Part shown: piece after piece, positions 36,927-61,773 of the stretch
Layout: each line of letters opens with the position of its first letter
Numbering within the stretch: position 1 is the first letter of the stretch
Virus record (IMG/VR): IMGVR_UViG_3300044797_000098
Span: 186,001 to 250,000 of that record
DNA: 64,000 nt
Direction: 5' to 3' (one strand)
Made by a program: the position numbers and the translations under genes
Notes under the pieces: model-generated
Told to the model about the DNA's origin: nothing
Seen by the model: the letters and a program-made list of their open reading frames with translations, nothing else
The model's database searches: none

Positions 36927-37898
36927 TTATTTTCCTTCTTGTTTTAGAAACTCTATTAATTTATCGGTATCACCATAATCAATATCTAATATAACACGCT
37001 CATTTCCTTTTGCTTGCTTTACACCACAACCCTCAATAATTATTTCTTCTTTATTTTTAGATTTAGCAGGAATGATTATTGTTCGTGTGTCATAAATAGT
37101 TTTAACTTCTTTTTCACATCCAATTAATGCATCGATTAGCGGTAAATTTAACTTGAAAATAACATCTGTTCCAACCAACGTTAAATCAGGGTCTGGTTCT
37201 ACTTCAACTTTTAAAAATACATCTGAATATACATCACCCATTATTCCAGCTGATCCGCCATAATTTCCAGCTCCTTGTATTCTCAATGTTGTAGAATTAC
37301 CCGACGGTATATTTATTTTTGCATTTACTTCAACTTCCGTAATCCCTTTTGCATTGCATTTTATGCAATCTTTAAATTTTACGTTTCTGCCATGGCATTT
37401 ACTGCACCCCGTTGAATAATGCATATTGCCTTGTTGTTGAATGACACGACCGAATCCATTACAAGATTTACATCCATTAGATTGTGGCTCTTTTCCATTA
37501 CCATCACAATCACTACATTTTATATTCTTTTTATATGATATCTCTTTTTCAACCCCCAACACGCTTTCTTTAAAAGATATTTTTGTATTTAAATTTATTG
37601 GTGATGCATTTATATTAGTTTGTTGCGAACGACCGAATCCATTAAAAATATCATTTAGATTTATATTAAATCCACCACCACTAAAAGGACTACGCGATTG
37701 TGGATTATATTTTTCAGGATTTTTACGATAGTCGATTATCAACTGATATGCTTCATTTATTTTTTTAAATTTATCAGTATCAGTTTTATATACATCTGGA
37801 TGAAACTGTTTTGCTAATTTTTTATATGTAGATTTTAAATCAGTATCAGATATACTATCTTGAACCTCTAATACATTATATGCTTCTTGAATATTCAT
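36927..37898 (-). CDS. dnaJ: DnaJ chaperone
   Basis: J domain with HPD and FKKINEAY, G/F region, four CxxCxGxG-type repeats, C-terminal domain. Confidence 0.95.
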   Translation of the reverse strand: MNIQEAYNVLEVQDSISDTDLKSTYKKLAKQFHPDVYKTDTDKFKKINEAYQLIIDYRKNPEKYNPQSRSPFSGGGFNINLNDIFNGFGRSQQTNINASPINLNTKISFKESVLGVEKEISYKKNIKCSDCDGNGKEPQSNGCKSCNGFGRVIQQQGNMHYSTGCSKCHGRNVKFKDCIKCNAKGITEVEVNAKINIPSGNSTTLRIQGAGNYGGSAGIMGDVYSDVFLKVEVEPDPDLTLVGTDVIFKLNLPLIDALIGCEKEVKTIYDTRTIIIPAKSKNKEEIIIEGCGVKQAKGNERVILDIDYGDTDKLIEFLKQEGK

Positions 37899-38442
37899 TC
37901 ATCTTACCGCTTTCTAACATTAATGAACAATAATATGCGACGCACATAGCATCACTTACATCATAACTTTCTATTTTAATTTTACCTTTTTTATCTTTTA
38001 TCCAAGGATATTCGATATCTAATAATGCAGATATATGTTGTGGGAGTTCTTCTTTTGCAGGAAGTTTTTTTTCACCAATTTCTCGACGAATACCATGTCT
38101 AATAGACATAACATTGAATAGATCTGGTGGTCTTCCTAAAAAATCATATGCCATCAATCCAATCATTCTATTAAATACTGAAAGATTAATTATTGTTGTG
38201 GCGCTACTTTTACCTTTCATAAACTTAATTAAATCCTCTATGGCAATATAGTCAGGATTATATTTTTCCACAATCTGTCGAATATCTTTTCGAGTTTGGT
38301 CTAGTCTTTCAAAAAGATTTCCTTTTTTCGAAGGTTTATAAAACGAATGATTTATAAGTTTTGGTTTTTGCCCACGAGCATAACTTAATATACACCATCC
38401 TATTGTAGTCGTCGAAACATCAATACCCATTATTATAGCCAT
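37876..38442 (-). CDS. RuvC-like Holliday junction resolvase
   Basis: IMGIDVSTTTIGW, YIAIED, YDVSDAMCVA. Confidence 0.82.
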   Translation of the reverse strand: MAIIMGIDVSTTTIGWCILSYARGQKPKLINHSFYKPSKKGNLFERLDQTRKDIRQIVEKYNPDYIAIEDLIKFMKGKSSATTIINLSVFNRMIGLMAYDFLGRPPDLFNVMSIRHGIRREIGEKKLPAKEELPQHISALLDIEYPWIKDKKGKIKIESYDVSDAMCVAYYCSLMLESGKMNEYSRSI

Positions 38443-38471
38443 AGCACTGACTATATCGTTATATTACATAA

Positions 38472-38512
38472 TTAAAATAAATAGGGTAAAACCATTTCTG
38501 ATCCTACCCTAT
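38472..38512 (-). terminator. Probable intrinsic terminator after the SSB gene
   Basis: atagggta...taccctat stem followed by TTATTTT on the minus strand. Confidence 0.6.
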
Positions 38513-38546
38513 AAATATATCAATTTATGCGTGTTTTTACGCTAAA

Positions 38547-39227
38547 TTAAGCTGATTTTTTCTTAGAATCATAATCTTTGAAAAAATTACTCGAATCATC
38601 ATCTTCATCATCTGATTGATTTGATGAATCAGATCCGCCACCATTACCACCAATCTCTTCTGTTATTTTAGCAAGACGAGCTTGAACCTGTTCATATGTT
38701 GGAGGTGTTGTTCTACGAACCAATGCATCTGTGCCATTTTCTGCTTGAATAGCAAGATCTGATGCAGACAATGGTTTCTTTGGTTTAGCAACCGCAGAAT
38801 ATCTCGTTGGGCCAGCTTGATCACCAGCATTTATAATCGATATATCGTATGTTGATGGATCGCCCCAATCTGGATCATCATTAAGGTTTTTAATTCCCTT
38901 AAAAACTGTAAAACTGGCATCTAATATTTTATACATATTAGTTTCACGATCTATAACACCAATTAACCAACGTCGTTTTGGTTTATTGTCTTGCTCACAT
39001 AATGGACATCCTGTTTCTTTCGTGCTTGAACAATTAACACGATATCCGTATTTTTTGCCACCTTCTGGTGCATATGTGTGCTGTGAATATTGATGTGGAA
39101 GTGTTAATACACGAATAAGATTCGTGCCTTCTTTAAGACGCATCCATTCATCTTTCTTGCCGTTACTTTTATTTGGGTCGAATAATACTGTATCTGACCA
39201 ATTTACTTCACCACTTTTATTTGCCAT
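38547..39227 (-). CDS. Single-stranded DNA-binding protein (T4 gp32-like)
   Basis: LKEGTNLIRVL, H..C..CPLC zinc site, YDISI, acidic tail DDEDDD. Confidence 0.78.
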   Translation of the reverse strand: MANKSGEVNWSDTVLFDPNKSNGKKDEWMRLKEGTNLIRVLTLPHQYSQHTYAPEGGKKYGYRVNCSSTKETGCPLCEQDNKPKRRWLIGVIDRETNMYKILDASFTVFKGIKNLNDDPDWGDPSTYDISIINAGDQAGPTRYSAVAKPKKPLSASDLAIQAENGTDALVRRTTPPTYEQVQARLAKITEEIGGNGGGSDSSNQSDDEDDDSSNFFKDYDSKKKSA

Positions 39228-39355
39228 TTTATTTTCCTATTATCTATTCAATCTAACTATTAGATTTACTGTTTTTATAACCGATTTTTAGCATCTTTTA
39301 CGATGCTAATTTCCTAATTAATATGCTATTTTATTACCCGTTTTAATACTTATTT

Positions 39356-39679
39356 TTAGCCTGCAATGAAACGAACATAACGTGTTCGAGAATGATCTGT
39401 TGTGCGACCAAAACGAACGCTAACACCAGCATTACGAATTGATGGAACTATAACGTTTAGAACACGACGAAAATAACTTGGTGAACGAATGCCAGTGCGG
39501 ATTTTACCACTTAGATCTGTCATTGTTCCAATCCATTGACCATTTTTTGTCGAGTTAAGTAAATCAATTACTTGTTGTTTGATGTTGTTAACAACGGCGC
39601 GATCAACATTGATTGATCGTGTTGTTGTGCTGCTGCTTGTCTTGCGACCTGTTCGGGTTGTTTTTGCTGTTTTACTCAT
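39356..39679 (-). CDS. Small basic putative DNA-binding protein (winged-helix-like)
   Basis: K/R/T-rich N-tail; WIGTMTDL...SPSYFRRVLN...GVSVRFGR. Confidence 0.55.
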   Translation of the reverse strand: MSKTAKTTRTGRKTSSSTTTRSINVDRAVVNNIKQQVIDLLNSTKNGQWIGTMTDLSGKIRTGIRSPSYFRRVLNVIVPSIRNAGVSVRFGRTTDHSRTRYVRFIAG

Positions 39680-39738
39680 TTTGATTTCTCCTATTTTTAT
39701 TTTCTGTTTTTTGTTTGATTGTTTATTAAGGTAAGTTT

Positions 39739-40092
39739 TTACTTTGTTTGTTGTTTATGTCTATAAATTAGATTCTGAATATCAATTATTCGATTCCAAG
39801 GAATCTGAACCTCTACGAATTGTGATACATCTGTTTCTTTTATTCTTTCATTATACTCTGTTCTAACCGAATCAGATGGACAATAAAATCCTACGAACTT
39901 TGCACAATGAACGAAACTATCGTCATATTTTACTGCCAAAAAATATGGCATCTTTTGTTGTTTGGTAACTTCTAATGTTATTAGATATGTTGGAAGTGTT
40001 CGTTGTGGTGCTTTGTATGAATCTAAAATCGAAGGCTGACCCGGTGTTTCTTCAATTTGTCTATTTTTTTGTGGAACTAATATATCTGGCAT
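39739..40092 (-). CDS. Hypothetical protein
   Basis: 117-aa ORF abutting recA. Confidence 0.65.
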   Translation of the reverse strand: MPDILVPQKNRQIEETPGQPSILDSYKAPQRTLPTYLITLEVTKQQKMPYFLAVKYDDSFVHCAKFVGFYCPSDSVRTEYNERIKETDVSQFVEVQIPWNRIIDIQNLIYRHKQQTK

Positions 40093-40093
40093 A

Positions 40094-41245: not shown

Positions 41246-41733
41246 CCTATCATATCATTGTTATTATTTGATGAGACTATACCTTTGCGCATTCCAATAC
41301 CAACATCTTTATAGTAATGGTGTGCTTTGATTAGTATTTCATACTTTCTCTCTAAAAAAGTTTTACTTCCTTTTGCTTTTGCGAGCAAGGCATTTAATTT
41401 CTCAACATCCGTTGAGGATTCACCTGCTTGTTTTTTCATATCAGCGGTAGTTTTTCCATCCGCTGCTTTATATTCAAGAGCAACTTTATTTTTTATTGAA
41501 TTGACTTTTGTTTCTAAAAAAGAAACTGTTTTTACCAGTTTTGCGATATAACCAATTAATATATCTGCTCCGTATAACGTTTTTTGTTGAAGCATTTCGG
41601 CGTGAGCGATATCGATGGCATTTTCTGATGCCAGAACCGAAAGCACCTGTTGTATTTCAGTTAAATCGAAGTCTGAAAAATTATCGTCGAAACTTTCGCC
41701 AACCGCCTGACCAAGTGTGATTTTTTCTTTCAT
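41236..41733 (-). CDS. Helical protein, possible UvsY-like recombination mediator
   Basis: 165-aa coiled-coil overlapping the recA start. Confidence 0.4.
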   Translation of the reverse strand: MKEKITLGQAVGESFDDNFSDFDLTEIQQVLSVLASENAIDIAHAEMLQQKTLYGADILIGYIAKLVKTVSFLETKVNSIKNKVALEYKAADGKTTADMKKQAGESSTDVEKLNALLAKAKGSKTFLERKYEILIKAHHYYKDVGIGMRKGIVSSNNNNDMIGWK

Positions 41734-41784
41734 ACATCTAATTTACTCACTGTCTGATTTATTCGCAACATCTTTATTTTTAAT

Positions 41785-42120: not shown

Positions 42121-42121
42121 A

Positions 42122-43138
42122 TTATCTATTATCTCTTTCTTCTATATTTTTCTTGGCTGAGTACGGACGAAGATTTTCTAACGACCAGCACTTTAAAAAA
42201 TTAGGATGTTCGAAACTATTAAATATTAATTTTGATTGCGGAACTATGTGATCTATTTGCCAAGTCCAAGTCGACGGATCTTTTTCATTCCAGCTTTTAG
42301 GATTATATACACCATGATTATTTAACGTCATCCATGCTTTGCCATCTGGTGTTAAATTTTCTGAATCATTAAATTTACTAACTAAGTGCTCTAATAACTC
42401 TTCTCCTGTAAATGGAAGATTATATTTACATGATACTTTCTTTTTTAATCCCATTTGACTTTTGATCATTCTACGAATAAAATTAGAAACATATATCATA
42501 TATTTATATGTTGGATCAATTTTTCTTTTCTTTTTATTTGTTTCATTTTTCTTTTTATTTATTGCGGACTTATTATTATAATAATAGTCTCTACCATATT
42601 TTTGCCTTTCTTCTTTATTTTCTTCATAGTATTCACTTGCTTTTTCTAAAATATCTTCCTTATTATCTTTATAATAATTTTGGGAGTATTCTATTTTTTC
42701 TTGCTGATGACTATCATAATACGTTTTTGCTTTAACTGCATCTTTTTTCTTTTCATCACACGTTCTGTTTTCTCTTTTTTCTTTTGATTTTTGTGCTATT
42801 TCTTCCTTGTTTTCTTTTCTATATTCTTTACTATATTCTAACCTTGCTTCTTTATTATTTTTATAGTAATCTATGGATCTACCTATCTCTCGTTCTTTAT
42901 TTTCTTTATAATAATTTATATTATATTCTGATTTTTCTTCTTTATGTTCTGCACCATATGAATTTATTCGTTCTAACTCTTGTTCTCTATTATCTTCAAA
43001 ATATTTTTTATTATATTTTGTTTTACATATTTTACACATATATTCTAGTCCGTCTTTATTATTTTTATTTTTAGAAAAAAATGAAAGATCCCTTTCTTGT
43101 TCACATTTTGTGCAAGTCTTTTTCTCAACATTTTCCAT
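42122..43138 (-). CDS. Putative homing endonuclease (zinc finger, Y/K/E repeats, HNH-like C-terminus)
   Basis: CTKC...CKIC; repeated YYxxNKE; WQIDHIVP...CWSLENLRPYSAKKN. Confidence 0.8.
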   Translation of the reverse strand: MENVEKKTCTKCEQERDLSFFSKNKNNKDGLEYMCKICKTKYNKKYFEDNREQELERINSYGAEHKEEKSEYNINYYKENKEREIGRSIDYYKNNKEARLEYSKEYRKENKEEIAQKSKEKRENRTCDEKKKDAVKAKTYYDSHQQEKIEYSQNYYKDNKEDILEKASEYYEENKEERQKYGRDYYYNNKSAINKKKNETNKKKRKIDPTYKYMIYVSNFIRRMIKSQMGLKKKVSCKYNLPFTGEELLEHLVSKFNDSENLTPDGKAWMTLNNHGVYNPKSWNEKDPSTWTWQIDHIVPQSKLIFNSFEHPNFLKCWSLENLRPYSAKKNIEERDNR

Positions 43139-43188
43139 ACCTAAAATCTCCTATAACTATACCAATTTATTAGCATTTTTATAGTATT

Positions 43189-48602: not shown

Positions 48603-49253
48603 TTATTTATCTAATATAATTTTTTTAATAACATCTTCTGGCGGATGATTATCACCATCATATATGTATATACGTTCTATTTTTGAAAACCTGTCTTTCC
48701 AAAAATCTTTTTCACTTATTTTTTTTGTTAATAACTGCTTAAGCTCATTAAAATTAAGTTTTCTTTTCTTATGAAGGGTATGAGCAATCAATCTCACCTC
48801 TTCCCAATGTTCTAAAAGTATTTTTTCAGTTTTTTTCTGAATATTTTTTTTAAAATTAGCTGTGTCTTTGCCAGGTTCAGCTAAATTATTATTTCTAATA
48901 ATATTGGATGCATTCTTTATATCAAAAGACAACCCTACACGAAGATTTATAGGAAGTTTATGAGATCCCGTTATATCTTTATATAATATCCTTTCTCCTA
49001 ATAAACCAGCATACATAGATTGTAATTCGAATATTAACATAGTTCGTTTTAATTCTGTATCATTAACATACAATGTGGAATACCAGTTGGTAGCCCCATC
49101 TTTTTCCTCACGCGTCTTAGCGTCTATTGCGCGAACATTGACATTAAAGACTTGAAAAAAATTATGCAGAGCGCATATTGCATGCGCAGATTCATGAAAA
49201 CTGGTAAATATAAGCTCATAATCTAAGGCATCTTTGATTTTTAAGCCCTTCAT
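48603..49253 (-). CDS. Stand-alone FtsH/M41-like zinc metallopeptidase
   Basis: FHESAH (HExxH), YAGLLGE, SFDIKNA; no AAA domain or membrane anchor. Confidence 0.78.
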   Translation of the reverse strand: MKGLKIKDALDYELIFTSFHESAHAICALHNFFQVFNVNVRAIDAKTREEKDGATNWYSTLYVNDTELKRTMLIFELQSMYAGLLGERILYKDITGSHKLPINLRVGLSFDIKNASNIIRNNNLAEPGKDTANFKKNIQKKTEKILLEHWEEVRLIAHTLHKKRKLNFNELKQLLTKKISEKDFWKDRFSKIERIYIYDGDNHPPEDVIKKIILDK

Positions 49254-49267: not shown

Positions 49268-49558
49268 CTATATTTTAATAAGAATATGTTCTAACTCTAT
49301 GATATTATTCTCACAATTATCTGTTTTACACTTTATATTTAATCTATTGGAGCCAAACGGCCCTATCGCAGTAAGATCTATGCTTTCCATATAGAATAGT
49401 CCAAGATTAGTATAGGTTTTATTTTCCATAAACTTTGAGCCAGTGAAAAACTTTATATGGTCTTTATCCAATGGAATACCCAATTCAATTATTAATTGGC
49501 CTTTATTGCATTTGCTACAAGAGGCAGTGTTGAGTATGGTTTTTTTAATTGTTGTCAT
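49268..49558 (-). CDS. Small Cys-containing hypothetical protein
   Basis: CSKC...CKTDNC. Confidence 0.65.
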   Translation of the reverse strand: MTTIKKTILNTASCSKCNKGQLIIELGIPLDKDHIKFFTGSKFMENKTYTNLGLFYMESIDLTAIGPFGSNRLNIKCKTDNCENNIIELEHILIKI

Positions 49559-49907: not shown

Positions 49908-50198
49908 CTAATTTAAATTAATTCCACGACTTTCGAGTGTAAAAATAGCGAATTGTATTTTTGCATTTTCGCTTGCTTTACTTTCAGAATATGGCTTAGA
50001 AAGATCTTTTACAATCTCTTTTGCTGCATTCAATTTTTCATCGTTTTCTTTGGCAGCAGCAATCTCGTATAAATTACCTTCACACGTTAGAATGCGGGCT
50101 TTTATCTCATCGTCTGACATAGCGTTGATTGCATCAACGAACTCTGGCGACAATTTTTTTAACAACTTGACCGGGAACTCTTTATCATCTTTACTCAT
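49908..50198 (-). CDS. Small coiled-coil hypothetical protein
   Basis: 96-aa ORF, tight packing. Confidence 0.7.
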   Translation of the reverse strand: MSKDDKEFPVKLLKKLSPEFVDAINAMSDDEIKARILTCEGNLYEIAAAKENDEKLNAAKEIVKDLSKPYSESKASENAKIQFAIFTLESRGINLN

Positions 50199-50199
50199 T

Positions 50200-51069
50200 T
50201 TATTTACCTGTGTCTTTCTTTTTGTTGTTTCTATTTCTTTTAGTTTTATGTCTTAATTCTTGATTACCCTCTTCTACATTTCTTTTAGCTGAATACGGTC
50301 GAAGATTTTTTAATGACCAACATTTTAGAAAATTTGGATGGTCATAACTATCGAATAATAAATCTGCCTGTGGCTCTATGTGATCAATTTGCCACTTCCA
50401 AGTCGCAGGATCTTTTTCATCCCACGTATCAATATTATATACACCCTGATTATTTTTCGTCATCCATACCTCACCATTCGGGCCTAGACTATCCGGGTGA
50501 TCGAATAACCTAATAAGATGTTCCCATAATTCTATTTCTGTATATGGTAATTTTAATTTGCACGATATTCCATTTTTAGATCCTCCTTGACTTTTTAACA
50601 TTCTAAAAATAGATGATGATATGTTTTTCATACATTTCCATATTGGATCATTTTTTCTTCTATTAGCAGAATATTTATTATGATTTTTTGTTAACTTTTT
50701 TCTATTTTCTTTTCTAAATACTTTGGCTTTTTCAGCTATTTCTTCTTTATGTTCTTCTCTATATTTTATTTGATATTCGGTTATTTCTTCTTTATTTTCT
50801 AAATAATATTCTTTTTTCTTTTCTTTATTATTTTCATAATATAACTTGTGAGTTTCATCTACTTGATTTTTATGTTCTTTATAATACTGTTTACCATATT
50901 CCGAGGATTTTTCCTTATTATCATTATACCATTCTAATGATTTTTTAGCAACACAAACTTTACAATCATTTTTAAATTTATTTGTATCTTTACGAAAAGA
51001 AAAATTCTCTAAATTTTCTTCTTTTTCTTCACCGCATTTAATGCATATTTTTGTTGTATTTTCACTCAC
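50200..51069 (-). CDS. Putative homing endonuclease, paralog of 42122..43138 (likely GTG start at 51069)
   Basis: CIKC...CKVC; YYxxNKE repeats; WQIDHIEP...CWSLKNLRPYSAKRN. Confidence 0.8.
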   Translation of the reverse strand: MSENTTKICIKCGEEKEENLENFSFRKDTNKFKNDCKVCVAKKSLEWYNDNKEKSSEYGKQYYKEHKNQVDETHKLYYENNKEKKKEYYLENKEEITEYQIKYREEHKEEIAEKAKVFRKENRKKLTKNHNKYSANRRKNDPIWKCMKNISSSIFRMLKSQGGSKNGISCKLKLPYTEIELWEHLIRLFDHPDSLGPNGEVWMTKNNQGVYNIDTWDEKDPATWKWQIDHIEPQADLLFDSYDHPNFLKCWSLKNLRPYSAKRNVEEGNQELRHKTKRNRNNKKKDTGK

Positions 51070-51106
51070 CTTATATCCCACTAATAATATGATTTTATTA
51101 GCAATT

Positions 51107-52348
51107 TTACTCAATTATTTTACAGTTTTTAACTAAAAATTCGAGCGTGAATTCATCACGAATACGATTCAAAAATAAACCTAATTGACCATTTTTATAC
51201 AACTCTTCAAACACCTTTTGAGGTTCCCGCGTATGTTGTTGTAGATTCGCTTGGGCTATTTTCAATAATTCATCCTGACTTAATTGTGCTTCGGGCTCTT
51301 TCTCACGAACCTTCTCTAATACGAGCGATAGCTTGACATTATCTTCCGATGATTTAATGAATGCCTCTTTTTCATTATCACTTATCGTATTCCAATCTTT
51401 TTTATTATTACGAGCATTTACTTGTGCTTCTGCTGTTGATATCCATGTCGGAATAACGAAGTCATGTTCTGCAACCAATCGTTTTGCGATTTGATCAATA
51501 ATGCCAGCCTTTTCTAATTCTTTAATTCGATTACCAGCCATTCCATTAACGTTTTCAATTAATGAATTTAATGTTTCTAATCCTACCGCTTTTGCTAAAT
51601 CATCATTAAGTTCCGCTGGTGTTATTTTACTACCCATATGTAATTTTACCTCAAACTTAAGTATTTGATTATTATATTCTGGTTTAATTTTTGCATCGAA
51701 TAATAATTCGAACTCTCTTGTTTCTCCTACTTTCATACCAAGTATATTTTCACTGAACCCCGGAATATCAATTTTACCAACACTAACTAATTCACCAGCA
51801 TTTTTAAAACCTTCAATAGCAACTCCATCTTTGAATACCTGGTAATCAATAATTACATTATCGCCCATCTGAACAACGTCGTTTTCACCGTATGCCGTTG
51901 TTGTTCCATTGCGTTCTCGTAATTCTTGAAGCATCTTTGCCCCAAGATCATCTGCTGTCATACCAACTGCTGGTTTTGGTATCTCAAAATCTCTATATGT
52001 TCTCAATTCAAAATCTGGCTGCTTATGAAGAGAAAACTCACAACTAAACTTTGTATTTTCGAGTTTTGCATATGTAAATTGAGGACGACCAAAAGGTTTT
52101 ACATCTTTTTCGAATAATGTATTTTGAACTGCTGCATCGGCAAGTTCTTGTGTAAGTGCATTTTGTATTTCTTTTTTAAAGTGAGTTTTGATTGCTTCTG
52201 GTGTAGCTTTATTTTTACGGAAGCCTGGAACTTTATATTTACGGAACTTATTAATTACCTCTGATCGTTTTTCATTGATTTCATTTTGATCTGCTTCAAC
52301 TTGAACGAGGATTTTGCAGTATTCGGTTTCATTACACGTTATATTCAT
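51107..52348 (-). CDS. tig: Trigger factor
   Basis: VPGFRKNKA ribosome-binding loop; FKBP-like GDNVIIDY...IPGFSENILGMKVGETREF; C-terminal chaperone domain. Confidence 0.92.
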   Translation of the reverse strand: MNITCNETEYCKILVQVEADQNEINEKRSEVINKFRKYKVPGFRKNKATPEAIKTHFKKEIQNALTQELADAAVQNTLFEKDVKPFGRPQFTYAKLENTKFSCEFSLHKQPDFELRTYRDFEIPKPAVGMTADDLGAKMLQELRERNGTTTAYGENDVVQMGDNVIIDYQVFKDGVAIEGFKNAGELVSVGKIDIPGFSENILGMKVGETREFELLFDAKIKPEYNNQILKFEVKLHMGSKITPAELNDDLAKAVGLETLNSLIENVNGMAGNRIKELEKAGIIDQIAKRLVAEHDFVIPTWISTAEAQVNARNNKKDWNTISDNEKEAFIKSSEDNVKLSLVLEKVREKEPEAQLSQDELLKIAQANLQQHTREPQKVFEELYKNGQLGLFLNRIRDEFTLEFLVKNCKIIE

Positions 52349-52827
52349 TTTGATTTTCCTGTATTAACTAATTGTTTAATCAATCTTGCTAACTCATCTG
52401 GCTTAATTGTATAAAACTTATTTGATGCAAGTTTTTCCTTAGCCCGCTGCTTCTCTTGTTTTATCTTTTCTTTTTCTTTTTTAAGCATCTCGGTATTTTT
52501 TATATATTTTTGTATTAAATACGCATCTGTTTGTTTAGCATAACCATTTATACAAACCCGCGCTCTTCTGCCATAATTACTATCTACGTAATAGTATGGT
52601 TCAATTAAATCTTTACTAAATGCCTCGGCTAATTTTAATGCTTCAATAAAACTATTGAGTATTAAAATATTATCATTAGATGATCCTGTGAATGGAAACG
52701 ATTTATATATTTGTTTAGAATATAAACGAATTAATACTGATCTTTCATTATCTGTTAATTTTGATGGAATCTTGTTAGATTTTATCTGCTTATTTAACTC
52801 ACTAAAAACTTTTCTTTGACTTACCAT
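52345..52827 (-). CDS. Hypothetical basic protein
   Basis: 160-aa ORF overlapping both neighbours. Confidence 0.65.
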   Translation of the reverse strand: MVSQRKVFSELNKQIKSNKIPSKLTDNERSVLIRLYSKQIYKSFPFTGSSNDNILILNSFIEALKLAEAFSKDLIEPYYYVDSNYGRRARVCINGYAKQTDAYLIQKYIKNTEMLKKEKEKIKQEKQRAKEKLASNKFYTIKPDELARLIKQLVNTGKSK

Positions 52828-53698: not shown

Positions 53699-54325
53699 TT
53701 ATATTACTACGCTTGGTGTTTTATTCATTTTAATGCGTGGGACATCTAATTTATCCACCGATACACAAAAATTACTTTTTGCCCACGCCCTTGATTGTAT
53801 TGTACGCGGTATTATATCCCCCTCATTAAGGATGATACATACACCTTTTTTACAAAAATTGGTATGATTAATTATACCAATATCATAAAATACGCGCCTA
53901 CTTTTTACATATTTTTCATCGTCGATTCTAACAAAAACATGGTAATCGATTTTATCGAGCGCTCCTAATCCGTTTTGAGTAAAACTATCACGTGTTATTA
54001 GCAAGTTTTTTGCATTTGGTTTTGATGTATTAACGCTGTATTTTTTTCCATCATTATCAATTAAATCAATCCCATCGTCATGATTTTTATCTACATAGAT
54101 CTCAAAATCTGGCTTATTTGTGCCGAGTAAAAGATATGCTATAATTTCTGCAAGTTTGCCGAAAAATAAATCTCTTTTTCTCTCACTAACTGTTCTAAAT
54201 CTGGATCCTCTCTGCAATCTCGGATCAATAGTTTCTGATTTTTTATTAGCAAACTTTATCGCTTCGTTAATTAGATCTTTTGATATTTTGATTTCAACAC
54301 CTTTAAAATTTAAATCCATCCTCAT
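53699..54325 (-). CDS. Restriction-endonuclease-like PD-(D/E)xK protein (start reassigned to MRMDLN)
   Basis: GKLAE...DDGIDL...YSVNT; the catalytic E/K positions look degenerate. Confidence 0.5.
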   Translation of the reverse strand: MRMDLNFKGVEIKISKDLINEAIKFANKKSETIDPRLQRGSRFRTVSERKRDLFFGKLAEIIAYLLLGTNKPDFEIYVDKNHDDGIDLIDNDGKKYSVNTSKPNAKNLLITRDSFTQNGLGALDKIDYHVFVRIDDEKYVKSRRVFYDIGIINHTNFCKKGVCIILNEGDIIPRTIQSRAWAKSNFCVSVDKLDVPRIKMNKTPSVVI

Positions 54326-54335
54326 AAATACCTTT

Positions 54336-55358
54336 CTAATGTAATACCACTCTCTGATTCCAAACCCATTTAAAAACCATACCAACACCCTGATCCCTCG
54401 GAAAAACCATCTGATACAAGGCACCAACATCTTGTTTTGTTGGCTGATACGGATATGTAGATATTATCCATCTATTGACCGTATTATCTCTATAATAACA
54501 TGTAAAACTGTTGGTGCGAGCATTATATTCTCGACGAACAAAAGATCCCTGTGTTGGAGGACTATCGAGCGCCGTATTCATTAATAGATTTCCATCTCTT
54601 ACAATTTCTGTATTTTCCAATGAAAAATCTCCACGATTAATTATTACTGGATTTGTTGGGTCTTCTGTTGTAGCATCCTGATATACAACTAATGCTCGTG
54701 GATTAAATATCTTATCTGATGTTGATGATTGTTCTTGCACATATTCTACTGGCGTAGATTTGCCAATTATTCTGGTTGTTGATGGAAGATTTCCTACACC
54801 CGGATAGACTTCACCTTCCGAGTTTTCGGTTGAATATATTTGTTTAAATTTATTATTAACCGACGATGGGTCATTTACGAACCCAGCAGGATTACCATTA
54901 GCATCAAAACCACTTGGAATGGCTGGCTGAGATTCATTATACACTGTAACACCAGCATTCTGCGTTCCAAGATATCTAAAATTAGGATTTGGGCTATCTG
55001 TCCCGAATGGATATAGACTATTCACCGAACTTGCATTATTTAGATTTGTTGTTGCTGAACGAGATACTCTTGCTCCGACTGCATATGCCGGTAATTGTTC
55101 TGGCGTTGTTGAATATGTTTGAGTAATTATTGCTGAATTATCTACACCATTTGTAGCGAATACATTTAATATAACTGTTAAAAGTGTTTGTGGCATAGTT
55201 ATTGGAACTATATAGATTGGTGAAGAAAGATCTGGTGTTGATCCGTCAAGTGTAAAAAATATAGTGGAAGGCTCACTCGTAGATATGGCAATAGTATCCG
55301 GGATACCGGGAATAGTTTGCGTTGCACTTGCTGTTATTGTGATATTGATTACGCCCAT
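54336..55358 (-). CDS. Probable virion protein with N-terminal Ig/Fn3-associated domain
   Basis: ISTSEPSTIFFTLDGSTPD motif; T/N/P-rich composition; own upstream TATA-N6-CATA element. Confidence 0.6.
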   Translation of the reverse strand: MGVINITITASATQTIPGIPDTIAISTSEPSTIFFTLDGSTPDLSSPIYIVPITMPQTLLTVILNVFATNGVDNSAIITQTYSTTPEQLPAYAVGARVSRSATTNLNNASSVNSLYPFGTDSPNPNFRYLGTQNAGVTVYNESQPAIPSGFDANGNPAGFVNDPSSVNNKFKQIYSTENSEGEVYPGVGNLPSTTRIIGKSTPVEYVQEQSSTSDKIFNPRALVVYQDATTEDPTNPVIINRGDFSLENTEIVRDGNLLMNTALDSPPTQGSFVRREYNARTNSFTCYYRDNTVNRWIISTYPYQPTKQDVGALYQMVFPRDQGVGMVFKWVWNQRVVLH

Positions 55359-58113: not shown

Positions 58114-59291
58114 TCTTTCACTATATTATTTGCCAACTGTATAAAATCATCTTTTATTTCTTCTTCAACATTCTCGTCCGCGTATAACTTTATAGCCATT
58201 GCTTCATTTACCGTATTATCAATACTATTGTCTAATGTATTTTTTCTAATCGTAGCAACCCGTCGCTCTTCACTTACTCTTGCTGTGTGATATACACCAA
58301 TATCATTGGTTAAATAATTTTCTATCGCAGTTCGATCAATTTTAACAACATCAGGGCTATCCAATGTTATATTAAGTTTTACGATTGATTTAGCCAAGCC
58401 GTCTTTATTATTTTCTAATTCTTTTAGCACATAAGCCGTTGCATCTATTATATTTTCTGGCACGGATATTGAAACTTGATTTAATGAACGGGTGGGTATT
58501 TTTATATATTCATATGGTGTAGATTTGCTCGGATCTATAATGGCTATTAATTTATCTTGATCGGTTTCACCAAAATTACTTATATCCAATGATCCAATAT
58601 GTGAAACATAAGGAGATCTATTTAATATCTGATGTTTATGGATATGACCAAAAAATGTATAATCATAATCTTTGAACATCTCTATCGGACAAAATAACTC
58701 ATTGATAGTATCATCAATCTCATTCAAGGCCGGTATTGAACCTTCTATTGCAAGATGCCCGATCATACATTTCATATTATTGCGATTTATTTCTGCCAAT
58801 TCGTAAGGAAGCCTACTTTGCAATATACTTATTGCTTCATCATGACTATTTGTATTAAAAGATCGTCTATCTCGGAATGGCATCAATGTAAATGAAACAT
58901 CGTCTATGTGAATAGTGTTTATGGTTTTATAGACGAAAATATTTTCTATCTCCGCTGCTGTTATTATATCCAACGAACTAAACTGTTGCTGACCGGATCT
59001 TAAAAGATCATGATTGCCAAGAATTATATGAACCGATATATTTGCATCTGAACATCTTTTTAACCACTCAATTAGCAATACAACTATTTCTGATGGTGGT
59101 TTGGGATGATCGAACACATCGCCAGTTATTATTATTGTTGATACTTCATGATCGATTGCTTGATGTAAAATCCATTCTAAAATATTAAACTGATCCACCA
59201 CTCTTGAATTTAATTGGCTTCCAATTACTGGTTTTCCAATAACTGACATTCCACCAAGATGTGGGTCTCCAACAATCATCGTTTTATTCAT
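58104..59291 (-). CDS. sbcD: SbcD/Mre11-like nuclease
   Basis: GDPHLG, GDVFD, GNHD, GHL, GHIHKHQ. Confidence 0.92.
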   Translation of the reverse strand: MNKTMIVGDPHLGGMSVIGKPVIGSQLNSRVVDQFNILEWILHQAIDHEVSTIIITGDVFDHPKPPSEIVVLLIEWLKRCSDANISVHIILGNHDLLRSGQQQFSSLDIITAAEIENIFVYKTINTIHIDDVSFTLMPFRDRRSFNTNSHDEAISILQSRLPYELAEINRNNMKCMIGHLAIEGSIPALNEIDDTINELFCPIEMFKDYDYTFFGHIHKHQILNRSPYVSHIGSLDISNFGETDQDKLIAIIDPSKSTPYEYIKIPTRSLNQVSISVPENIIDATAYVLKELENNKDGLAKSIVKLNITLDSPDVVKIDRTAIENYLTNDIGVYHTARVSEERRVATIRKNTLDNSIDNTVNEAMAIKLYADENVEEEIKDDFIQLANNIVKECA

Positions 59292-59900
59292 TTAATATTT
59301 TTCCAGTTTATTAAAAAGTTTATTTATTAATTTCTTTAAACCATCTACTTCTAATGTATGTTTAGATGTCATAGTATCATACACAAGCGTCAATTTTTCT
59401 GCGTATGCTATCGCATCATCATCATTTGAATTATCTAATATAAACGATCTTATCTTGGATGAAAACTCTAAAATTGCATTTTGTCGATCAAAAAAATCTT
59501 TTTGATTATTGATTTCTACGCTATTATCAATATAATAGTTATCTACTATTTTTCGTGCTGCCTGTTCAGCAGTTAAATTTTCCATGTGTGAAACTAATTG
59601 AACTGCACGACCTCCGCGGTGGCATCCGAAACAATTGAATGATTTTGTTTCGCTATAATAATAAAATGATGGACTACGATCATTATGCCCTGGTAATGGG
59701 CAACATATTTTAGTCAATGTGTTGCCACTATATCCGTCTATATTTACTCCATATGCTTTTAATATTGTCATTAAATCAGCAGTGTTTGCCTGCTGAATAA
59801 GCAATTTTATAGCATCGCGATCATTTGTTCCAGTATTCCAACCTTCGTTTTGTGTTGCGCTGTTGCTATCTCGTTTGGGATTATATTGTATTTTTGGCAT
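59292..59900 (-). CDS. Stand-alone CHC2 zinc-finger domain of DNA primase plus helical extension
   Basis: CCPLPGHNDRSPSF...FNCFGCHRGG. Confidence 0.85.
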   Translation of the reverse strand: MPKIQYNPKRDSNSATQNEGWNTGTNDRDAIKLLIQQANTADLMTILKAYGVNIDGYSGNTLTKICCPLPGHNDRSPSFYYYSETKSFNCFGCHRGGRAVQLVSHMENLTAEQAARKIVDNYYIDNSVEINNQKDFFDRQNAILEFSSKIRSFILDNSNDDDAIAYAEKLTLVYDTMTSKHTLEVDGLKKLINKLFNKLEKY

Positions 59901-59971
59901 AACGACACATAACTGCTATATTGATCTTTTTCTTCAATAATTAAATTGAGCAACTTTTCTTTTGTGATCAT
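59807..59971 (-). CDS. Small hypothetical protein (likely start MITKEKLL)
   Basis: ATG 7 nt after the upstream stop; overlaps the 5' part of the CHC2 ORF. Confidence 0.5.
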   Translation of the reverse strand: MITKEKLLNLIIEEKDQYSSYVSLCQKYNIIPNEIATAQHKTKVGILEQMIAML

Positions 59972-59978
59972 AGGATCA

Positions 59979-60428
59979 TTATATTGCTTTATTTGTTTTG
60001 ACTTCCGAAGCCAACACATCTAATGCTTTCTCTATTTTTTCTAATTTATACTCTATATTGTTCATATTATCACGCTGAATTAATAACATTTTCATAAGCA
60101 ACATTGCTAATGCGGTTCCACCAGCACCTTCTGGCTGGTTTTCATCGGTATTTAATTCATTTGCAAGGGCAATTAGTTTCTGTAATATCTCTAACTCAAT
60201 ATCTTTATTGATTTGTGTTTTATTGATTACAAGTCTTTTGTCCTCAATAATTGCTTTAAACTTACTACCTAAATCAAAACTTCTCTGTTTATATTCTTCT
60301 ATTTTAGAAAATACCTTTTCTGCTTGTTCATTGAACGCAGCACTGGTATCCGGTTTCGGTTTAGGAATAGTTGAGGCCTGATTATTAATCTTAAGGCCTT
60401 TCTTTTTTGGATTATTGTCCGATGACAT
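59979..60428 (-). CDS. Hypothetical coiled-coil protein
   Basis: 149-aa ORF. Confidence 0.7.
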   Translation of the reverse strand: MSSDNNPKKKGLKINNQASTIPKPKPDTSAAFNEQAEKVFSKIEEYKQRSFDLGSKFKAIIEDKRLVINKTQINKDIELEILQKLIALANELNTDENQPEGAGGTALAMLLMKMLLIQRDNMNNIEYKLEKIEKALDVLASEVKTNKAI

Positions 60429-60744
60429 GATTTCGACTAATAATGATTAGATCTTTTTGAACTTCGAGATTATATTTTGAACCATCTTTATTTGCACCAA
60501 TGGCTTCTTCTAATGCTGGAATGAATGCAGATACCTTATATCGTAGAAAACATTTTGACGGATCGAGTGGAACCGGATTACAATACTGCGAAACGAATTG
60601 ATTTGGTATTGCAAACATTAATACTTCTTTGTTTTTAATTTCATTCCAGATTTTATCGCCTTCTGTTAGAAGTGCTGTTGGCTGGGCTGCTTGTTGTGGG
60701 TGTGATTTATTTGTTGTCATTTTATTATCCTTTTTAGTTTTCAT
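60412..60744 (-). CDS. Hypothetical protein
   Basis: 110-aa ORF. Confidence 0.7.
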   Translation of the reverse strand: MKTKKDNKMTTNKSHPQQAAQPTALLTEGDKIWNEIKNKEVLMFAIPNQFVSQYCNPVPLDPSKCFLRYKVSAFIPALEEAIGANKDGSKYNLEVQKDLIIISRNHVIGQ

Positions 60745-61042
60745 TTGTCTGTATCCCTGTTAAAATTACATCTAAATCTTTTTTTAGCAAGTTTCCTATA
60801 AATCTTTGTTTTTCTCTTGCATTTTTTATTAAAATTGTTGTAGGTATTTCAGTAATCCCGAACCTTCTACCTATGTTATCAAAATAGTGAATATCAATAC
60901 ATAATATGTATATATTATTATCTAATTTAGAAACTGATGAAAATAACATATCTTTTATTGGATTACATAAATCCGATGAATAAAAACACAATAACATATC
61001 TTGTTTAATACTAAAATCTTGTTCGGAAGTAAGAAACTGCAT
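60734..61042 (-). CDS. Thioredoxin-fold protein lacking CxxC
   Basis: FYSSDLCNPIK, IDI, FGITEIPT (cis-Pro), RFIG. Confidence 0.7.
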   Translation of the reverse strand: MQFLTSEQDFSIKQDMLLCFYSSDLCNPIKDMLFSSVSKLDNNIYILCIDIHYFDNIGRRFGITEIPTTILIKNAREKQRFIGNLLKKDLDVILTGIQTNEN

Positions 61043-61248
61043 TAGTTTTTATTTTGCTCTTTATTTTGCTCTTTATTTTGTAAAAATTTAATTACCCCCT
61101 CTGATATTACCTTAATCTCTTTTACGAGATCATCGGAAGTTAATATATTTTTATTTACGAGCACACGTTCGAGCGCCGATACTCGAATTATTAAATCTGC
61201 TACAAGCAAGTCTTGTTCTTTTTGTTTATTTTCGTTGTTATCGCTCAT
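61042..61248 (-). CDS. Small hypothetical protein
   Basis: 68 aa; ALERVLVNKNILTSDD. Confidence 0.7.
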   Translation of the reverse strand: MSDNNENKQKEQDLLVADLIIRVSALERVLVNKNILTSDDLVKEIKVISEGVIKFLQNKEQNKEQNKN

Positions 61249-61257
61249 TAATTTTCC

Positions 61258-61773
61258 TTATTTTCCGCAACATTTTTTAAATTTTTTACCACTACCACAT
61301 ATACATATATCATTCGGTCTAACTTTTTTAGGTTTTTCTTTCGGTAAAATAAAATCAGGCAATAGACGGTTATTCCAATGATCAATCTCATGTTGGGCAA
61401 CAACACCCATGAGACCCGTCAGTATCATTCCATGAGGATATACTAAATTATCTGAAATATGGACTTCATTATATCTGATCGTATCACCTACTAAATTAGG
61501 ATATGAAAGACATCCTTCTCCGATGAACTTAAATTGATCATATTTATTCTGTATTTTACAATTTACTAAATTGACTTTATGATTATTATCTATACGAATA
61601 ATAGCAACATTTTTATATATTCCGCATTGTATTGCGGATAGCCCTACACCCGGACGACCCATACGCCCAGAATACTCCAATTCACGTTCCAACTGCTCTA
61701 CAATGGCTCCTACTTCATTTTCAGGAACATCGGTGCAAGGCGTGCGTAAAACTGCTTCGTCTGTTATTATCAT
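61258..61773 (-). CDS. def: Peptide deformylase with C-terminal SEC-C zinc motif
   Basis: GVGLSAIQ, EGCLS, QHEIDH; tail RPNDICICGSGKKFKKCC. Confidence 0.93.
   Translation of the reverse strand: MIITDEAVLRTPCTDVPENEVGAIVEQLERELEYSGRMGRPGVGLSAIQCGIYKNVAIIRIDNNHKVNLVNCKIQNKYDQFKFIGEGCLSYPNLVGDTIRYNEVHISDNLVYPHGMILTGLMGVVAQHEIDHWNNRLLPDFILPKEKPKKVRPNDICICGSGKKFKKCCGK

What the first reader, a model, noticed from the sequence alone, without database searches (positions are those of the whole stretch)
36927..61773. Phage-encoded nascent-chain processing kit: PDF-SEC-C, trigger factor, DnaJ and a soluble FtsH-like protease
Seen: def (61258), tig (51107), full-length dnaJ (36927) and an M41 peptidase (48603) in one region. 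Established: PDF and trigger factor act sequentially at the ribosomal exit tunnel and hand substrates to DnaJ/DnaK. Trigger factor is an uncommon phage gene. Its ribosome-binding signature is GFRKNKA rather than GFRxGKxP. Inference: the phage re-equips host ribosome exit sites to favour folding of its own proteins.
Basis: partly seen in the sequence, partly recalled or inferred. Interest (0 to 1): 0.6.

Follow-up and report, generated by a model that had tools for sequence, protein, structure and literature searches.

The report
Jumbo-phage nascent-protein processing gene set
A 406-kb uncultured jumbo phage, like every relative examined, carries its own peptide deformylase (with a SecA-type zinc tail), trigger factor, DnaJ, a motor-less FtsH-type protease and, elsewhere in the genome, a methionine aminopeptidase, so this phage lineage has long supplied its own machinery for maturing newly made proteins.

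Summary
The four genes are real, intact and at the stated coordinates, in a bona fide phage: the window also holds the major capsid, portal and terminase genes. They are not one operon. They lie scattered through a replication/recombination gene block.

They are not recent captures.
- Trigger factor, PDF and DnaJ occur in 25 of 25 related IMG/VR records.
- The M41-like gene occurs in 69 of 71 syntenic loci.
- DnaK occurs in none.

Trigger factor diverges in step with DNA polymerase III alpha (Spearman 0.93). All four genes show dN/dS of 0.08-0.21. 137 phage-type trigger factors form one clade.

The ribosome-docking loop is the best-conserved trigger-factor segment. GFRKNKA is a minority Gly-to-Asn variant of a near-canonical GFRxGKA.

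The PDF lacks the usual ribosome-binding C-terminal helix. In all 43 homologues read it instead carries a SecA-like metal-binding tail, a module reported to bind ribosomes and SecB.

The M41 protein is a soluble FtsH protease domain with all catalytic residues and no ATPase.

Exit-site re-equipment is plausible but unproven, and preference for phage proteins has no support. Relatives (Judaphage group, Al-Shayeb 2020) carry these annotations undiscussed.

The parts
61258..61773 (-). Peptide deformylase fused to a C-terminal SecA-like (SEC-C) metal-binding tail
   Evidence: Pfam PF01327 76.5 bits plus PF02810 33.4 bits. Motifs GxGLSAxQ, EGCLS and QHExDH are present and invariant in a 39-sequence alignment, as are tail residues C157, C159 and C168. 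The AF2 model has pLDDT 94.4, its last helix is 120-133 and there is no alpha3 helix. Foldseek best match is E. coli PDF, TM 0.72. Residues 148-171 match the YchJ C-terminal SEC-C peptide. The gene is present in 25 of 25 related records.
51107..52348 (-). Trigger factor with all three domains: ribosome-binding N domain, FKBP-type PPIase and C-terminal chaperone body
   Evidence: Pfam Trigger_N 78.6 bits, FKBP_C 25.3 bits, Trigger_C 22.7 bits. TIGR00115 193 bits, above the 180.2 cut-off. It aligns end to end with E. coli TF 1w26 at E=1.6e-18. The loop GFRKNKA is at residues 42-48.
48603..49253 (-). Stand-alone soluble FtsH-type (M41) zinc-protease domain, with no AAA+ module and no membrane anchor
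   Evidence: HESAH is at residues 20-24. H20, E21, H24 and D111 are invariant in 45 homologues. The profile aligns these with E. coli FtsH HEAGH and the GASND Asp. AF2 pLDDT is 92. The top 50 Foldseek hits are all FtsH-family protease domains. There is no hydrophobic segment (KD19 maximum 1.05). The gene is present in 69 of 71 syntenic loci.
36927..37898 (-). Class A (type I) DnaJ co-chaperone: J domain with HPD, short G/F region, zinc-finger domain, C-terminal substrate-binding domains
   Evidence: Pfam DnaJ 49.2 bits, DnaJ_C 75.8 bits, DnaJ_CXXCXGXG 26.6 bits, the last below cut-off. HPD and the four CxxCxG motifs are conserved in 13 clade sequences. Full-length homologues occur in 25 of 25 related records, always close to the trigger-factor block.
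49908..50198 (-). Conserved 96-aa helical protein of unknown function between trigger factor and the M41 gene; possible partner, role untested
   Evidence: Homologue found in 70 of 71 loci. No Pfam or PHROGs match.
49268..49558 (-). Conserved 96-aa Cys-rich protein of unknown function directly upstream of the M41 gene; role untested
   Evidence: Homologue found in 67 of 71 loci. No Pfam or PHROGs match.
62068..62103 (-). Terminator-like hairpin (15-bp stem plus T run) upstream of the block that starts with the PDF
   Evidence: Consensus scan only. It lies in the 238-bp gap between ORFs 62286-62795 and 61827-62048.
38481..38512 (-). Terminator-like hairpin (14-bp stem plus T run) separating the PDF...TF...M41...PolIII...RecA block from RuvC-DnaJ
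   Evidence: Consensus scan only. It lies in the 105-bp gap between ORFs 38547-39227 and 37876-38442.

Best explanation
The phage belongs to, or sits beside, the 'Judaphage' lineage of roughly 350-480-kb uncultured phages. That lineage has inherited vertically a self-supplied set of factors for co-translational and early post-translational protein maturation.

Proposed working, all inferred:
1. The PDF removes the N-formyl group from nascent chains. Because it lacks the usual C-terminal ribosome-binding helix, its SecA-type zinc tail on a basic linker holds it near the exit tunnel.
2. The type I MetAP then removes the initiator methionine.
3. Trigger factor docks on uL23 through its conserved GFRxGKA loop and shields emerging chains.
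4. The class A DnaJ, and a second small J protein, hand clients to host DnaK, on which the phage depends.
5. The motor-less FtsH-type protease domain probably clears unfolded or truncated products, or trims specific targets.

The genes sit among replication genes, so they are probably expressed before the burst of late structural-protein synthesis. They would keep maturation capacity from becoming limiting during a long infection in which host gene expression is failing.

Shown here: gene identity, intact catalytic and docking motifs, clade-wide conservation, purifying selection and absence of a phage DnaK. Inferred: ribosome binding, timing and benefit.
For: Identity and intact motifs:
- Gene identities.
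- PDF motifs invariant.
- MetAP passes TIGR00500 (204 against 171 bits). Its five metal ligands and the catalytic His are invariant in 10 sequences.
- DnaJ HPD and zinc fingers conserved.
- M41 HExxH and Asp invariant.

Conservation in relatives:
- TF in 69 IMG/VR loci at 33-85% identity, many on 350-480-kb contigs, two with terminal repeats.
- The same gene order around TF at 55%, 42%, 30%, 28%, 27% and 26% identity.
- DnaJ 25/25, PDF 25/25, MetAP 10/10 near-complete records, M41 69/71 loci, HSP70 0/25.

Vertical inheritance and constraint:
- Pairwise identities of TF track PolIII alpha (Spearman 0.93) and SbcD (0.92), close to PolIII alpha against SbcD (0.96). M41 and PDF give 0.82-0.83.
- dN/dS is 0.08-0.21.
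- 137 phage-type TFs form one clade with SH-aLRT 100.

Ribosome docking:
- The loop at 41-48 has mean conservation 0.82 against 0.42-0.48 for the domains. G42 is kept in 136/137, R44 in 134/137 and G46 in 126/137.
- All 43 PDF homologues read end in a basic linker plus a CxCG(S/K)...KKCC tail.

Literature:
- Viral PDFs normally lack the ribosome-binding C-terminal region (PMC5591237).
- The SecA tail crosslinks near uL23, and YecA/AscA binds 70S ribosomes and SecB through the same metal-binding domain (PMC6620043; 10.1101/2020.07.21.215244).
Against:
- The host is unknown, so compatibility with its ribosome and DnaK cannot be judged.
- The genes are dispersed. MetAP is 140 kb from the trigger-factor block, and no shared regulation is shown.
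- Promoter-like sites are no more frequent than chance.
- The SecA-type domain also binds SecB, and in SecA it is not needed for ribosome binding. The tail could therefore serve another purpose.
- The phage has no SecB, Fmt or Pth.
- An FtsH protease domain without its unfoldase has no established activity of its own. Self-assembly was not supported by the complex prediction, which gave no verdict.
- In this particular phage the canonical Gly of the trigger-factor loop is Asn.
Confidence: 0.55

Rival explanations
1. Dedicated assembly chaperones. Trigger factor and DnaJ act mainly off the ribosome as holdases or assembly factors for the very large virion and replisome proteins of a 400-kb phage, filling the role that GroES/GroEL homologues play in other phages. 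PDF and MetAP merely top up ordinary host activities.
For: The phage has no Cpn60 or HSP70 of its own. It encodes very large proteins, for example ORFs of 1237 aa and 1172 aa. From general knowledge, bacterial trigger factor also works off the ribosome in the assembly of large complexes, and phage-encoded chaperonins for capsid folding are a known strategy.
Against: The ribosome-docking loop is the most conserved part of the phage trigger factor. That is hard to explain if docking were dispensable. The PDF tail and MetAP point to the exit site rather than to assembly.
Confidence: 0.2
2. Replication-module function. DnaJ (with host DnaK), and perhaps trigger factor and the M41 protease, remodel or turn over replication and recombination complexes, as host DnaJ/DnaK do for lambda replication initiation. 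Their position among replication genes would then reflect function and not only timing.
For: DnaJ overlaps the RuvC gene. Trigger factor lies between a PD-(D/E)XK nuclease and PolIII alpha, and M41 directly precedes PolIII alpha. This order holds across the lineage. DnaJ/DnaK action in lambda replication is established knowledge.
Against: PDF and MetAP have no plausible replication role, yet they are equally conserved. Trigger factor keeps its ribosome loop. Gene neighbourhood in phages often reflects expression timing rather than shared function.
Confidence: 0.1
3. Host takeover or counter-defence. The J proteins capture host DnaK, as the RB43 J-domain protein Rki does. The motor-less M41 domain poisons or retargets host FtsH hexamers. 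The PDF tail competes with SecA or YecA for SecB or ribosome sites, diverting host proteostasis rather than simply supplementing it.
For: There are two J-domain proteins and no DnaK. The M41 domain lacks an ATPase and so cannot act as a normal FtsH. The SecA-type domain binds SecB as well as ribosomes. The moraphage paper discusses phage J proteins and counter-defence (PMC12619734).
Against: All catalytic residues of PDF, MetAP and M41 are invariant, so activity is selected and not just binding. Full-length class A DnaJ with substrate-binding domains suggests client delivery rather than mere DnaK capture. No mixed-hexamer evidence exists.
Confidence: 0.1
4. The genes are bacterial DNA, either assembly contamination or a recent transfer, with no adapted role in the phage.
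For: IMG/VR flags several related records as 'provirus'. The proteins belong to typically cellular families.
Against: - The contig is a single 406-kb sequence with capsid, portal and terminase genes.
- Synteny is conserved down to 26% trigger-factor identity.
- The genes diverge in step with phage core genes.
- The phage trigger factors form one clade.
- The nearest bacterial trigger factor found is only 31% identical.
- Two related genomes have terminal repeats.
Confidence: 0.02

Closest known systems
Bacterial trigger factor (Tig; E. coli 1w26)
   Same: Same three-domain layout, aligned end to end. It passes the TIGR00115 equivalog model. The docking loop is conserved, with family consensus GFRxGKA against the canonical GFRxGxxP.
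   Different: Only about 20-30% identical to cellular trigger factors; the nearest found is 31%. It is encoded by a phage, in a replication module instead of beside clpP-clpX. The terminal Pro of the motif is kept in only 55 of 137 sequences, and in this phage the central Gly is Asn.
Viral peptide deformylases (cyanophage S-SSM7 PDF 3uwa; Vibrio phage Vp16 PDF 5mtc)
   Same: Intact catalytic motifs, and loss of the C-terminal alpha3 helix that tethers E. coli PDF to the ribosome.
   Different: The described viral PDFs simply end early. Here the helix is replaced by a basic linker plus a SecA-like Cys4 metal-binding tail, conserved in all 43 homologues read. No paper found in the library mentions a PDF-SEC-C fusion; the accessory-PDF survey has 0 mentions.
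SecA-like metal-binding domain (SecA C-terminal tail, YecA/AscA, YchJ)
   Same: Matches Pfam SEC-C above its cut-off and the YchJ C-terminal peptide in the PDB. It has the CxCxSG...CC/CH pattern described for these domains.
   Different: It is fused to a deformylase rather than to a translocase ATPase or a UPF0149 chaperone. Some clade members carry an insertion of about 8 residues in the knuckle. Binding partners are untested.
FtsH (peptidase family M41) protease domain
   Same: HExxH, the downstream Glu-containing helix and the third-ligand Asp all align with E. coli FtsH. The fold matches FtsH/AFG3L2/YME1 protease domains at TM 0.5-0.6 over nearly the whole protein.
   Different: No transmembrane segments and no AAA+ module. 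It scores below the Pfam M41 cut-off. Only clade members were found as stand-alone homologues by the word search. Oligomeric state is unknown.
Phage-encoded J proteins and chaperones (RB43 Rki; moraphage DnaK/DnaJ; phage GroES/GroEL)
   Same: A phage supplies a co-chaperone that must work with Hsp70. The moraphage study likewise reports DnaJ in large aquatic phages (PMC12619734).
   Different: Here DnaJ is a full class A protein and a core gene of an old lineage, not a recent transfer. No phage DnaK accompanies it. It co-occurs with trigger factor, PDF and MetAP.
Translation-related gene repertoire of huge phages (Al-Shayeb et al. 2020, Judaphage group)
   Same: Supplementary GenBank files of BM_PHAGE_CIR_35_55, GD_PHAGE_CIR_35_878 and SR-VP_PHAGE_40_16 annotate MetAP, DnaJ, trigger factor and PDF in the same order and spacing. 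Two of these, GD_PHAGE_CIR_35_878 and SR-VP_PHAGE_40_16, are listed as Judaphage. The paper's model includes PDF as a phage-encoded translation factor.
   Different: The main text never mentions trigger factor, chaperones or Judaphage. The co-conservation, the PDF tail, the M41 domain and the MetAP pairing are not discussed there. Placing this window's phage in that clade is my inference from shared synteny and similar N-terminal sequences, not a computed tree.

Membership tests
Trigger factor (TIGR00115 / Pfam Trigger_N + FKBP_C + Trigger_C) | Three-domain architecture scoring above the curated equivalog cut-off | tested here: met
   193 bits against a cut-off of 180.2. All three Pfam domains are at or above cut-off. 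Full-length alignment to E. coli TF.
Trigger factor | Ribosome-binding signature GFRxGxxP in the N domain | tested here: inconclusive
   This phage has GFRKNKAT: G, F and R are kept, the second Gly is Asn and the Pro is Thr. The family consensus is GFRxGKA with Pro in 55 of 137. The F-R-K triplet, known from E. coli mutagenesis to be needed for binding (general knowledge), is intact.
Trigger factor | Binds the ribosome at uL23 and chaperones nascent chains | not testable with these tools
   Needs co-sedimentation, crosslinking or complementation.
Peptide deformylase (Pfam PF01327; type 1B fold) | Three catalytic motifs (GxGxAAxQ, EGCLS, HExxH) and the PDF fold | tested here: met
   Motifs are present and invariant in 39 sequences. 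Pfam 76.5 bits against 22.8. Foldseek match to E. coli PDF with TM 0.72 and rmsd 2.4. It is below the NCBIfam TIGR00079 cut-off (76 against 104).
Peptide deformylase (bacterial type 1B) | C-terminal alpha3 helix that binds the ribosome | tested here: not met
   Homology to E. coli PDF ends near residue 151. The model has no helix after 133 apart from a 3-residue turn.
SecA-like metal-binding domain (Pfam SEC-C PF02810) | CxCxSGx(6-8)C[CH] motif scoring above cut-off | tested here: met
   33.4 bits against 20.4. C157, C159 and C168 are invariant. The motif is present in 43 of 43 homologues.
SecA-like metal-binding domain | Binds metal, SecB and/or ribosomes | not testable with these tools
   Only the literature on SecA and YecA is available.
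Class A (type I) DnaJ | J domain with HPD, G/F region, four CxxCxGxG repeats, C-terminal domains | tested here: met
   All are present. HPD and the Cys motifs are conserved in 13 clade sequences. Two caveats: the score is below the bacterial DnaJ equivalog cut-off (190 against 377), and two of the four repeats deviate from GxG in this phage.
Peptidase family M41 (FtsH) | HExxH plus a third zinc ligand Asp in the M41 fold | tested here: met
   H20, E21, H24 and D111 are invariant and align to FtsH HEAGH and the GASND Asp. The fold matches only FtsH-family protease domains.
Peptidase family M41 (FtsH) | Score above the Pfam gathering threshold; covalently linked AAA+ module and membrane anchor | tested here: not met
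   18.7 bits against 29.9. No AAA domain in the ORF or next to it, and only a weak AAA match 70 kb away. No hydrophobic segment. It is therefore a homologue of the protease domain, not an FtsH.
Type I methionine aminopeptidase (TIGR00500) | Equivalog score and five metal ligands | tested here: met
   204.4 bits against 171.35. The Asp, Asp, His, Glu, Glu ligands and the VHG His are invariant in 10 clade sequences. The gene is outside the window, at genome 82515-83309, minus strand.
Judaphage clade (Al-Shayeb et al. 2020) | Placement within the clade on terminase or capsid trees | not tested
   Inferred only. It rests on identical order of MetAP, DnaJ, TF and PDF, similar genome sizes and similar N-terminal sequences in the supplementary GenBank files, and on an IMG contig from sample 3300010403 appearing both in their tree and in my locus set.

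The most novel reading that the evidence does not exclude
A whole lineage of 350-480-kb phages runs its own co-translational maturation pathway on host ribosomes. The pathway consists of a deformylase tethered to the exit site by a borrowed SecA-type zinc tail (a tethering solution not described for any PDF), a methionine aminopeptidase, a trigger factor that competes with or replaces the host's, a DnaJ that commandeers host DnaK, and a motor-less FtsH-type protease ring acting as an ATP-independent quality-control peptidase. Together these give phage proteins preferential or sustained maturation after host shut-off.
Probability: 0.25. Interest if true: 0.8.

Novelty: new variant of a known kind. 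Interest (0 to 1): 0.6.

Why it matters
Phage-encoded deformylases, chaperonins and translation factors are known. A conserved, lineage-wide set covering deformylation, methionine excision, the first ribosome-bound chaperone and Hsp70 recruitment has not been described in the literature I could search.

If it works as proposed, three things follow:
- Nascent-chain maturation capacity, and not only initiation or tRNA supply, is limiting for very large phages.
- The PDF-metal-binding-domain fusion is a natural test of the idea that SecA-like tails are portable ribosome or SecB tethers.
- The motor-less M41 domain is a natural experiment on what an FtsH protease ring can do without its unfoldase.

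It also gives simple marker genes for recognising this phage lineage in metagenomes: the phage-type trigger factor and the tailed PDF.

Tried and rejected
- Complex prediction of three copies of the M41 domain gave no verdict (score 0.20, mark 0.42). It is not used for or against oligomerisation.
- The first genome-contig scan with the trigger-factor alignment found no bacterial relative, because the pattern was too clade-specific.
- Host inference failed.
  - Protein-atlas neighbours of trigger factor are bacterial clusters of mixed phyla.
  - Shine-Dalgarno use is weak and uninformative (AGGA in 31% of upstream regions).
  - Cluster look-ups gave no organism names.
  - Al-Shayeb's own table lists the host phylum as unknown.
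- The sigma-70 promoter scan found no more sites than chance, so no transcription-unit claim rests on promoters.
- The stand-alone M41 word search found only 18 proteins, all clade-like. This tool is limited to shared 5-mers, so absence elsewhere is not shown.
- Hits to trigger factor in the cultured-phage collection were at most 30.5% identical, mostly on short unannotated 'Bacteriophage sp.' contigs. I did not examine whether these are bacterial DNA.
- The trigger-factor tree used bacterial outgroups from only one unnamed phylum. It shows separation from those sequences but gives no rooted origin or donor.
- I considered and rejected the idea that the 304-aa ORF between trigger factor and the next conserved ORF belongs to the set. 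It is an EndoVII/HNH-like mobile endonuclease with paralogues elsewhere and a variable position in relatives.

Full report
WHAT IS THERE. The window is bases 186001-250000 of a single 406,470-bp contig. The contig has 35.6% G+C and two tRNA genes, is about 95% coding and is transcribed mostly from the minus strand. It is an IMG/VR virus record judged 95% complete. The window itself holds a major head protein (1944-2960), a portal (20862-22736), a large terminase (22782-24635) and a prohead-protease-like domain. The nearest cultured-phage terminase is only about 25% identical. This is therefore a genuine, uncultured jumbo phage.

THE FOUR GENES. All four ORFs are at the stated coordinates on the minus strand.

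The PDF (61258-61773) scores above the Pfam cut-offs for both Pep_deformylase and SEC-C and carries the three catalytic motifs.

Trigger factor (51107-52348) has all three Pfam domains, passes the NCBIfam equivalog TIGR00115 and aligns end to end with E. coli trigger factor.

DnaJ (36927-37898) is a class A protein with HPD, a short G/F region, four Cys pairs and the C-terminal domains. It is too divergent to pass the bacterial DnaJ equivalog.

The M41-like ORF (48603-49253) is sub-threshold in Pfam (18.7 bits). A 45-sequence profile hits only FtsH-family proteases in the PDB down to E=0.04, with E. coli FtsH best at E=3e-7. That alignment pairs its HExxH, the following Ala-Glu helix and an invariant Asp with the FtsH zinc site. 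An AF2 model (pLDDT 92) matches only FtsH/AFG3L2/YME1/FtsHi protease domains. The protein has no hydrophobic segment, and no AAA+ module lies in it or beside it. 'Soluble FtsH-like protease domain' is thus a fair description; 'FtsH' is not.

The genome also encodes a type I methionine aminopeptidase at genome 82515-83309, outside the window. It passes TIGR00500 and has all metal ligands. There is also a second protein, of 125 aa, with only a J domain, at genome 164528-164905. The genome has no HSP70, Cpn60, SecB, formyltransferase or peptidyl-tRNA hydrolase.

The four genes are not a contiguous kit. On the minus strand the order is:
- PDF, thioredoxin, primase zinc ribbon, SbcD, SbcC, dNMP kinase, a CHB_HEX-domain protein, a PD-(D/E)XK nuclease;
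- trigger factor, small ORFs, M41, PolIII alpha, then on to RecA;
- a strong hairpin, then RuvC and DnaJ.

CONSERVATION. The trigger factor has more than 100 relatives at 40-85% identity, nearly all 409-428 aa long, many on contigs of 200-470 kb. An IMG/VR scan returned 69 loci at 33-85% identity. Many are on 350-480-kb contigs, two of which have terminal repeats.

Gene order around trigger factor is the same at 55%, 42%, 30%, 28%, 27% and 26% identity.

Across the loci, M41 is present in 69 of 71, PolIII alpha in 71 of 71 and the nuclease in 70 of 71. In 25 whole related records the counts are:
- DnaJ 25/25, always full length and near the block;
- PDF 25/25;
- MetAP 17/25 overall, and 10/10 in records at least 90% complete;
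- HSP70 0/25.

In two very divergent contigs no ORF the size of M41 lies between the small ORFs and the polymerase. M41 may therefore be younger than trigger factor in this lineage.

VERTICAL INHERITANCE AND CONSTRAINT. Pairwise identities of trigger factor correlate with those of PolIII alpha (Spearman 0.93) and SbcD (0.92), nearly as well as the two replication proteins correlate with each other (0.96). M41 and PDF give 0.82-0.83 against PolIII alpha. The pairs are not independent, but a shared tree is exactly the point being tested.

dN/dS against the two closest relatives is 0.08-0.21 for all four genes, with dS near saturation.

An exhaustive HMMER search found 6976 trigger factors at E<=1e-3 but only 148 at E<=1e-30. 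The lowest-scoring listed hit checked (31% identity, 121 bits) is on a bacterial MAG contig with non-phage neighbours.

In a quick IQ-TREE, 137 phage-type sequences form one clade (SH-aLRT 100, stem length 0.53) apart from ten bacterial trigger factors. The outgroup comes from a single unnamed phylum, so this shows coherence of the phage family. It does not identify a donor.

FUNCTIONAL DETAIL. Over 137 phage trigger factors the loop reads G(136) F/Y(124) R(134) x G(126) K(119) A(126), with Pro next in 55. It is the best-conserved stretch of the protein: 0.82 against 0.42-0.48 for the three domains. The window's Asn at the second Gly is a minority state, found in 6 of 137. This pattern argues that ribosome docking is under selection.

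The PDF core aligns with E. coli PDF to about residue 151 and keeps the short turn after the catalytic helix. The alpha3 helix is absent. In its place every one of 43 homologues has a basic linker and a Cys4 (or Cys3His) SEC-C tail. The Cys and Lys positions are invariant in the 39-sequence alignment.

Three points come from the literature:
- The alpha3 helix tethers E. coli PDF to the ribosome, and described viral PDFs lack it (PMC5591237).
- The SecA C-terminal tail crosslinks near uL23 (PMC6620043).
- The near-identical domain of YecA/AscA is needed for binding to 70S ribosomes and to SecB (10.1101/2020.07.21.215244).

That the tail re-tethers this PDF to the exit site is my inference. Binding to SecB or another partner is equally allowed by these data.

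MOST LIKELY MECHANISM. I think it most likely (about 0.55) that the lineage supplies its own nascent-chain maturation line. That line comprises deformylation, methionine excision, trigger-factor shielding and DnaJ-mediated hand-over to host DnaK, with the M41 domain as an ATP-independent clean-up or processing peptidase.

The genes sit in a replication block bounded by two strong terminator-like hairpins. This suggests, but does not show, expression before the late burst of structural-protein synthesis.

No data support a preference for phage proteins over host proteins.

The rivals are off-ribosome assembly chaperoning, a direct role in replisome remodelling, and host takeover or counter-defence. 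They are listed with their tests in the Rival explanations section, and contamination is effectively excluded.

RELATION TO WHAT IS KNOWN. No paper in the searchable library links trigger factor with jumbo or huge phages. PHROGs holds a weakly matching unannotated trigger-factor-like family and a DnaJ-like family, but nothing for M41.

The supplementary GenBank files of Al-Shayeb et al. 2020 annotate MetAP, DnaJ, trigger factor and PDF in the same order and spacing in three genomes: BM_PHAGE_CIR_35_55 and GD_PHAGE_CIR_35_878 (both 437,772 bp) and SR-VP_PHAGE_40_16 (426,196 bp). Their table lists GD_PHAGE_CIR_35_878 and SR-VP_PHAGE_40_16 as Judaphage, with the host phylum unknown. The main text mentions PDF within a model of translation redirection, but never trigger factor, chaperones or Judaphage.

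The raw annotations therefore exist. The following points appear to be new observations within a known theme:
- the lineage-wide co-conservation;
- the PDF tail;
- the motor-less M41 domain;
- the PDF-MetAP-trigger-factor pairing;
- dependence on host DnaK.

Placing this phage in or beside Judaphage is an inference, not a computed placement.

LIMITS.
- The host is unresolved.
- The complex prediction gave no verdict.
- The tree has a narrow outgroup.
- Whether PDF-SEC-C fusions or stand-alone M41 domains occur outside this lineage was not established.

Noticed in passing
window 50200-51114 and 42122-43138 (minus strand); also genome 97678-98574: Three paralogous EndoVII/HNH-like endonuclease genes. 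One is inserted directly between trigger factor and the next conserved ORF. In relatives the homologues sit at other positions, which fits mobile homing endonucleases.
   Followed up: partly
genome 82515-83309 (minus strand), outside the window; locus L005:2515-3309: Type I methionine aminopeptidase with all metal ligands. It is present in all 10 near-complete related genomes and completes the deformylase-aminopeptidase pair.
   Followed up: yes
genome 164528-164905 (plus strand), outside the window; locus L006:2528-2905: A 125-aa protein consisting of little more than a J domain with HPD, making it a second potential DnaK-recruiting factor. Its conservation in relatives was not checked systematically.
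   Followed up: partly
locus L098 (Logan contig SRR14234123_210885): A distant relative of the trigger factor (27% identity), next to the same PD-(D/E)XK nuclease, translates to the recorded protein only if TAG is read as Gln. Part of this phage lineage may therefore use a recoded stop codon.
   Followed up: no
locus L097/L099 (bacterial MAG GCA_003694355.1, contig RFKI01000125.1): This genome's only trigger factor scores 121 bits against the phage protein, while 30 other genomes of its phylum score 33-83 bits. It may be a transfer between phage and bacterium, or a mis-binned contig.
   Followed up: partly
window 11808-15521 (minus strand): A 1237-aa ORF in a region of raised G+C (about 42% against about 33%). 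Only residues 103-213 resemble a head maturation protease; the rest is unassigned.
   Followed up: no
window 52345-52827 and 53699-54430 (minus strand): Two ORFs flanking the nuclease gene upstream of trigger factor have no homologue in any of 71 related loci and no Pfam match. They look like strain-specific insertions in an otherwise conserved block.
   Followed up: no
window 54336-55358 (minus strand): A 340-aa protein with a chitobiase/hexosaminidase C-terminal (Fn3-associated) domain is conserved in 70 of 71 loci inside the replication block, which is an odd place for such a domain.
   Followed up: no
related IMG/VR records G002, G007, G008, G012-G014, G016, G021: IMG/VR labels eight of these 220-480-kb relatives 'provirus', although others of the same lineage have terminal repeats. 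This is possibly a misclassification caused by their many cellular-type genes.
   Followed up: no
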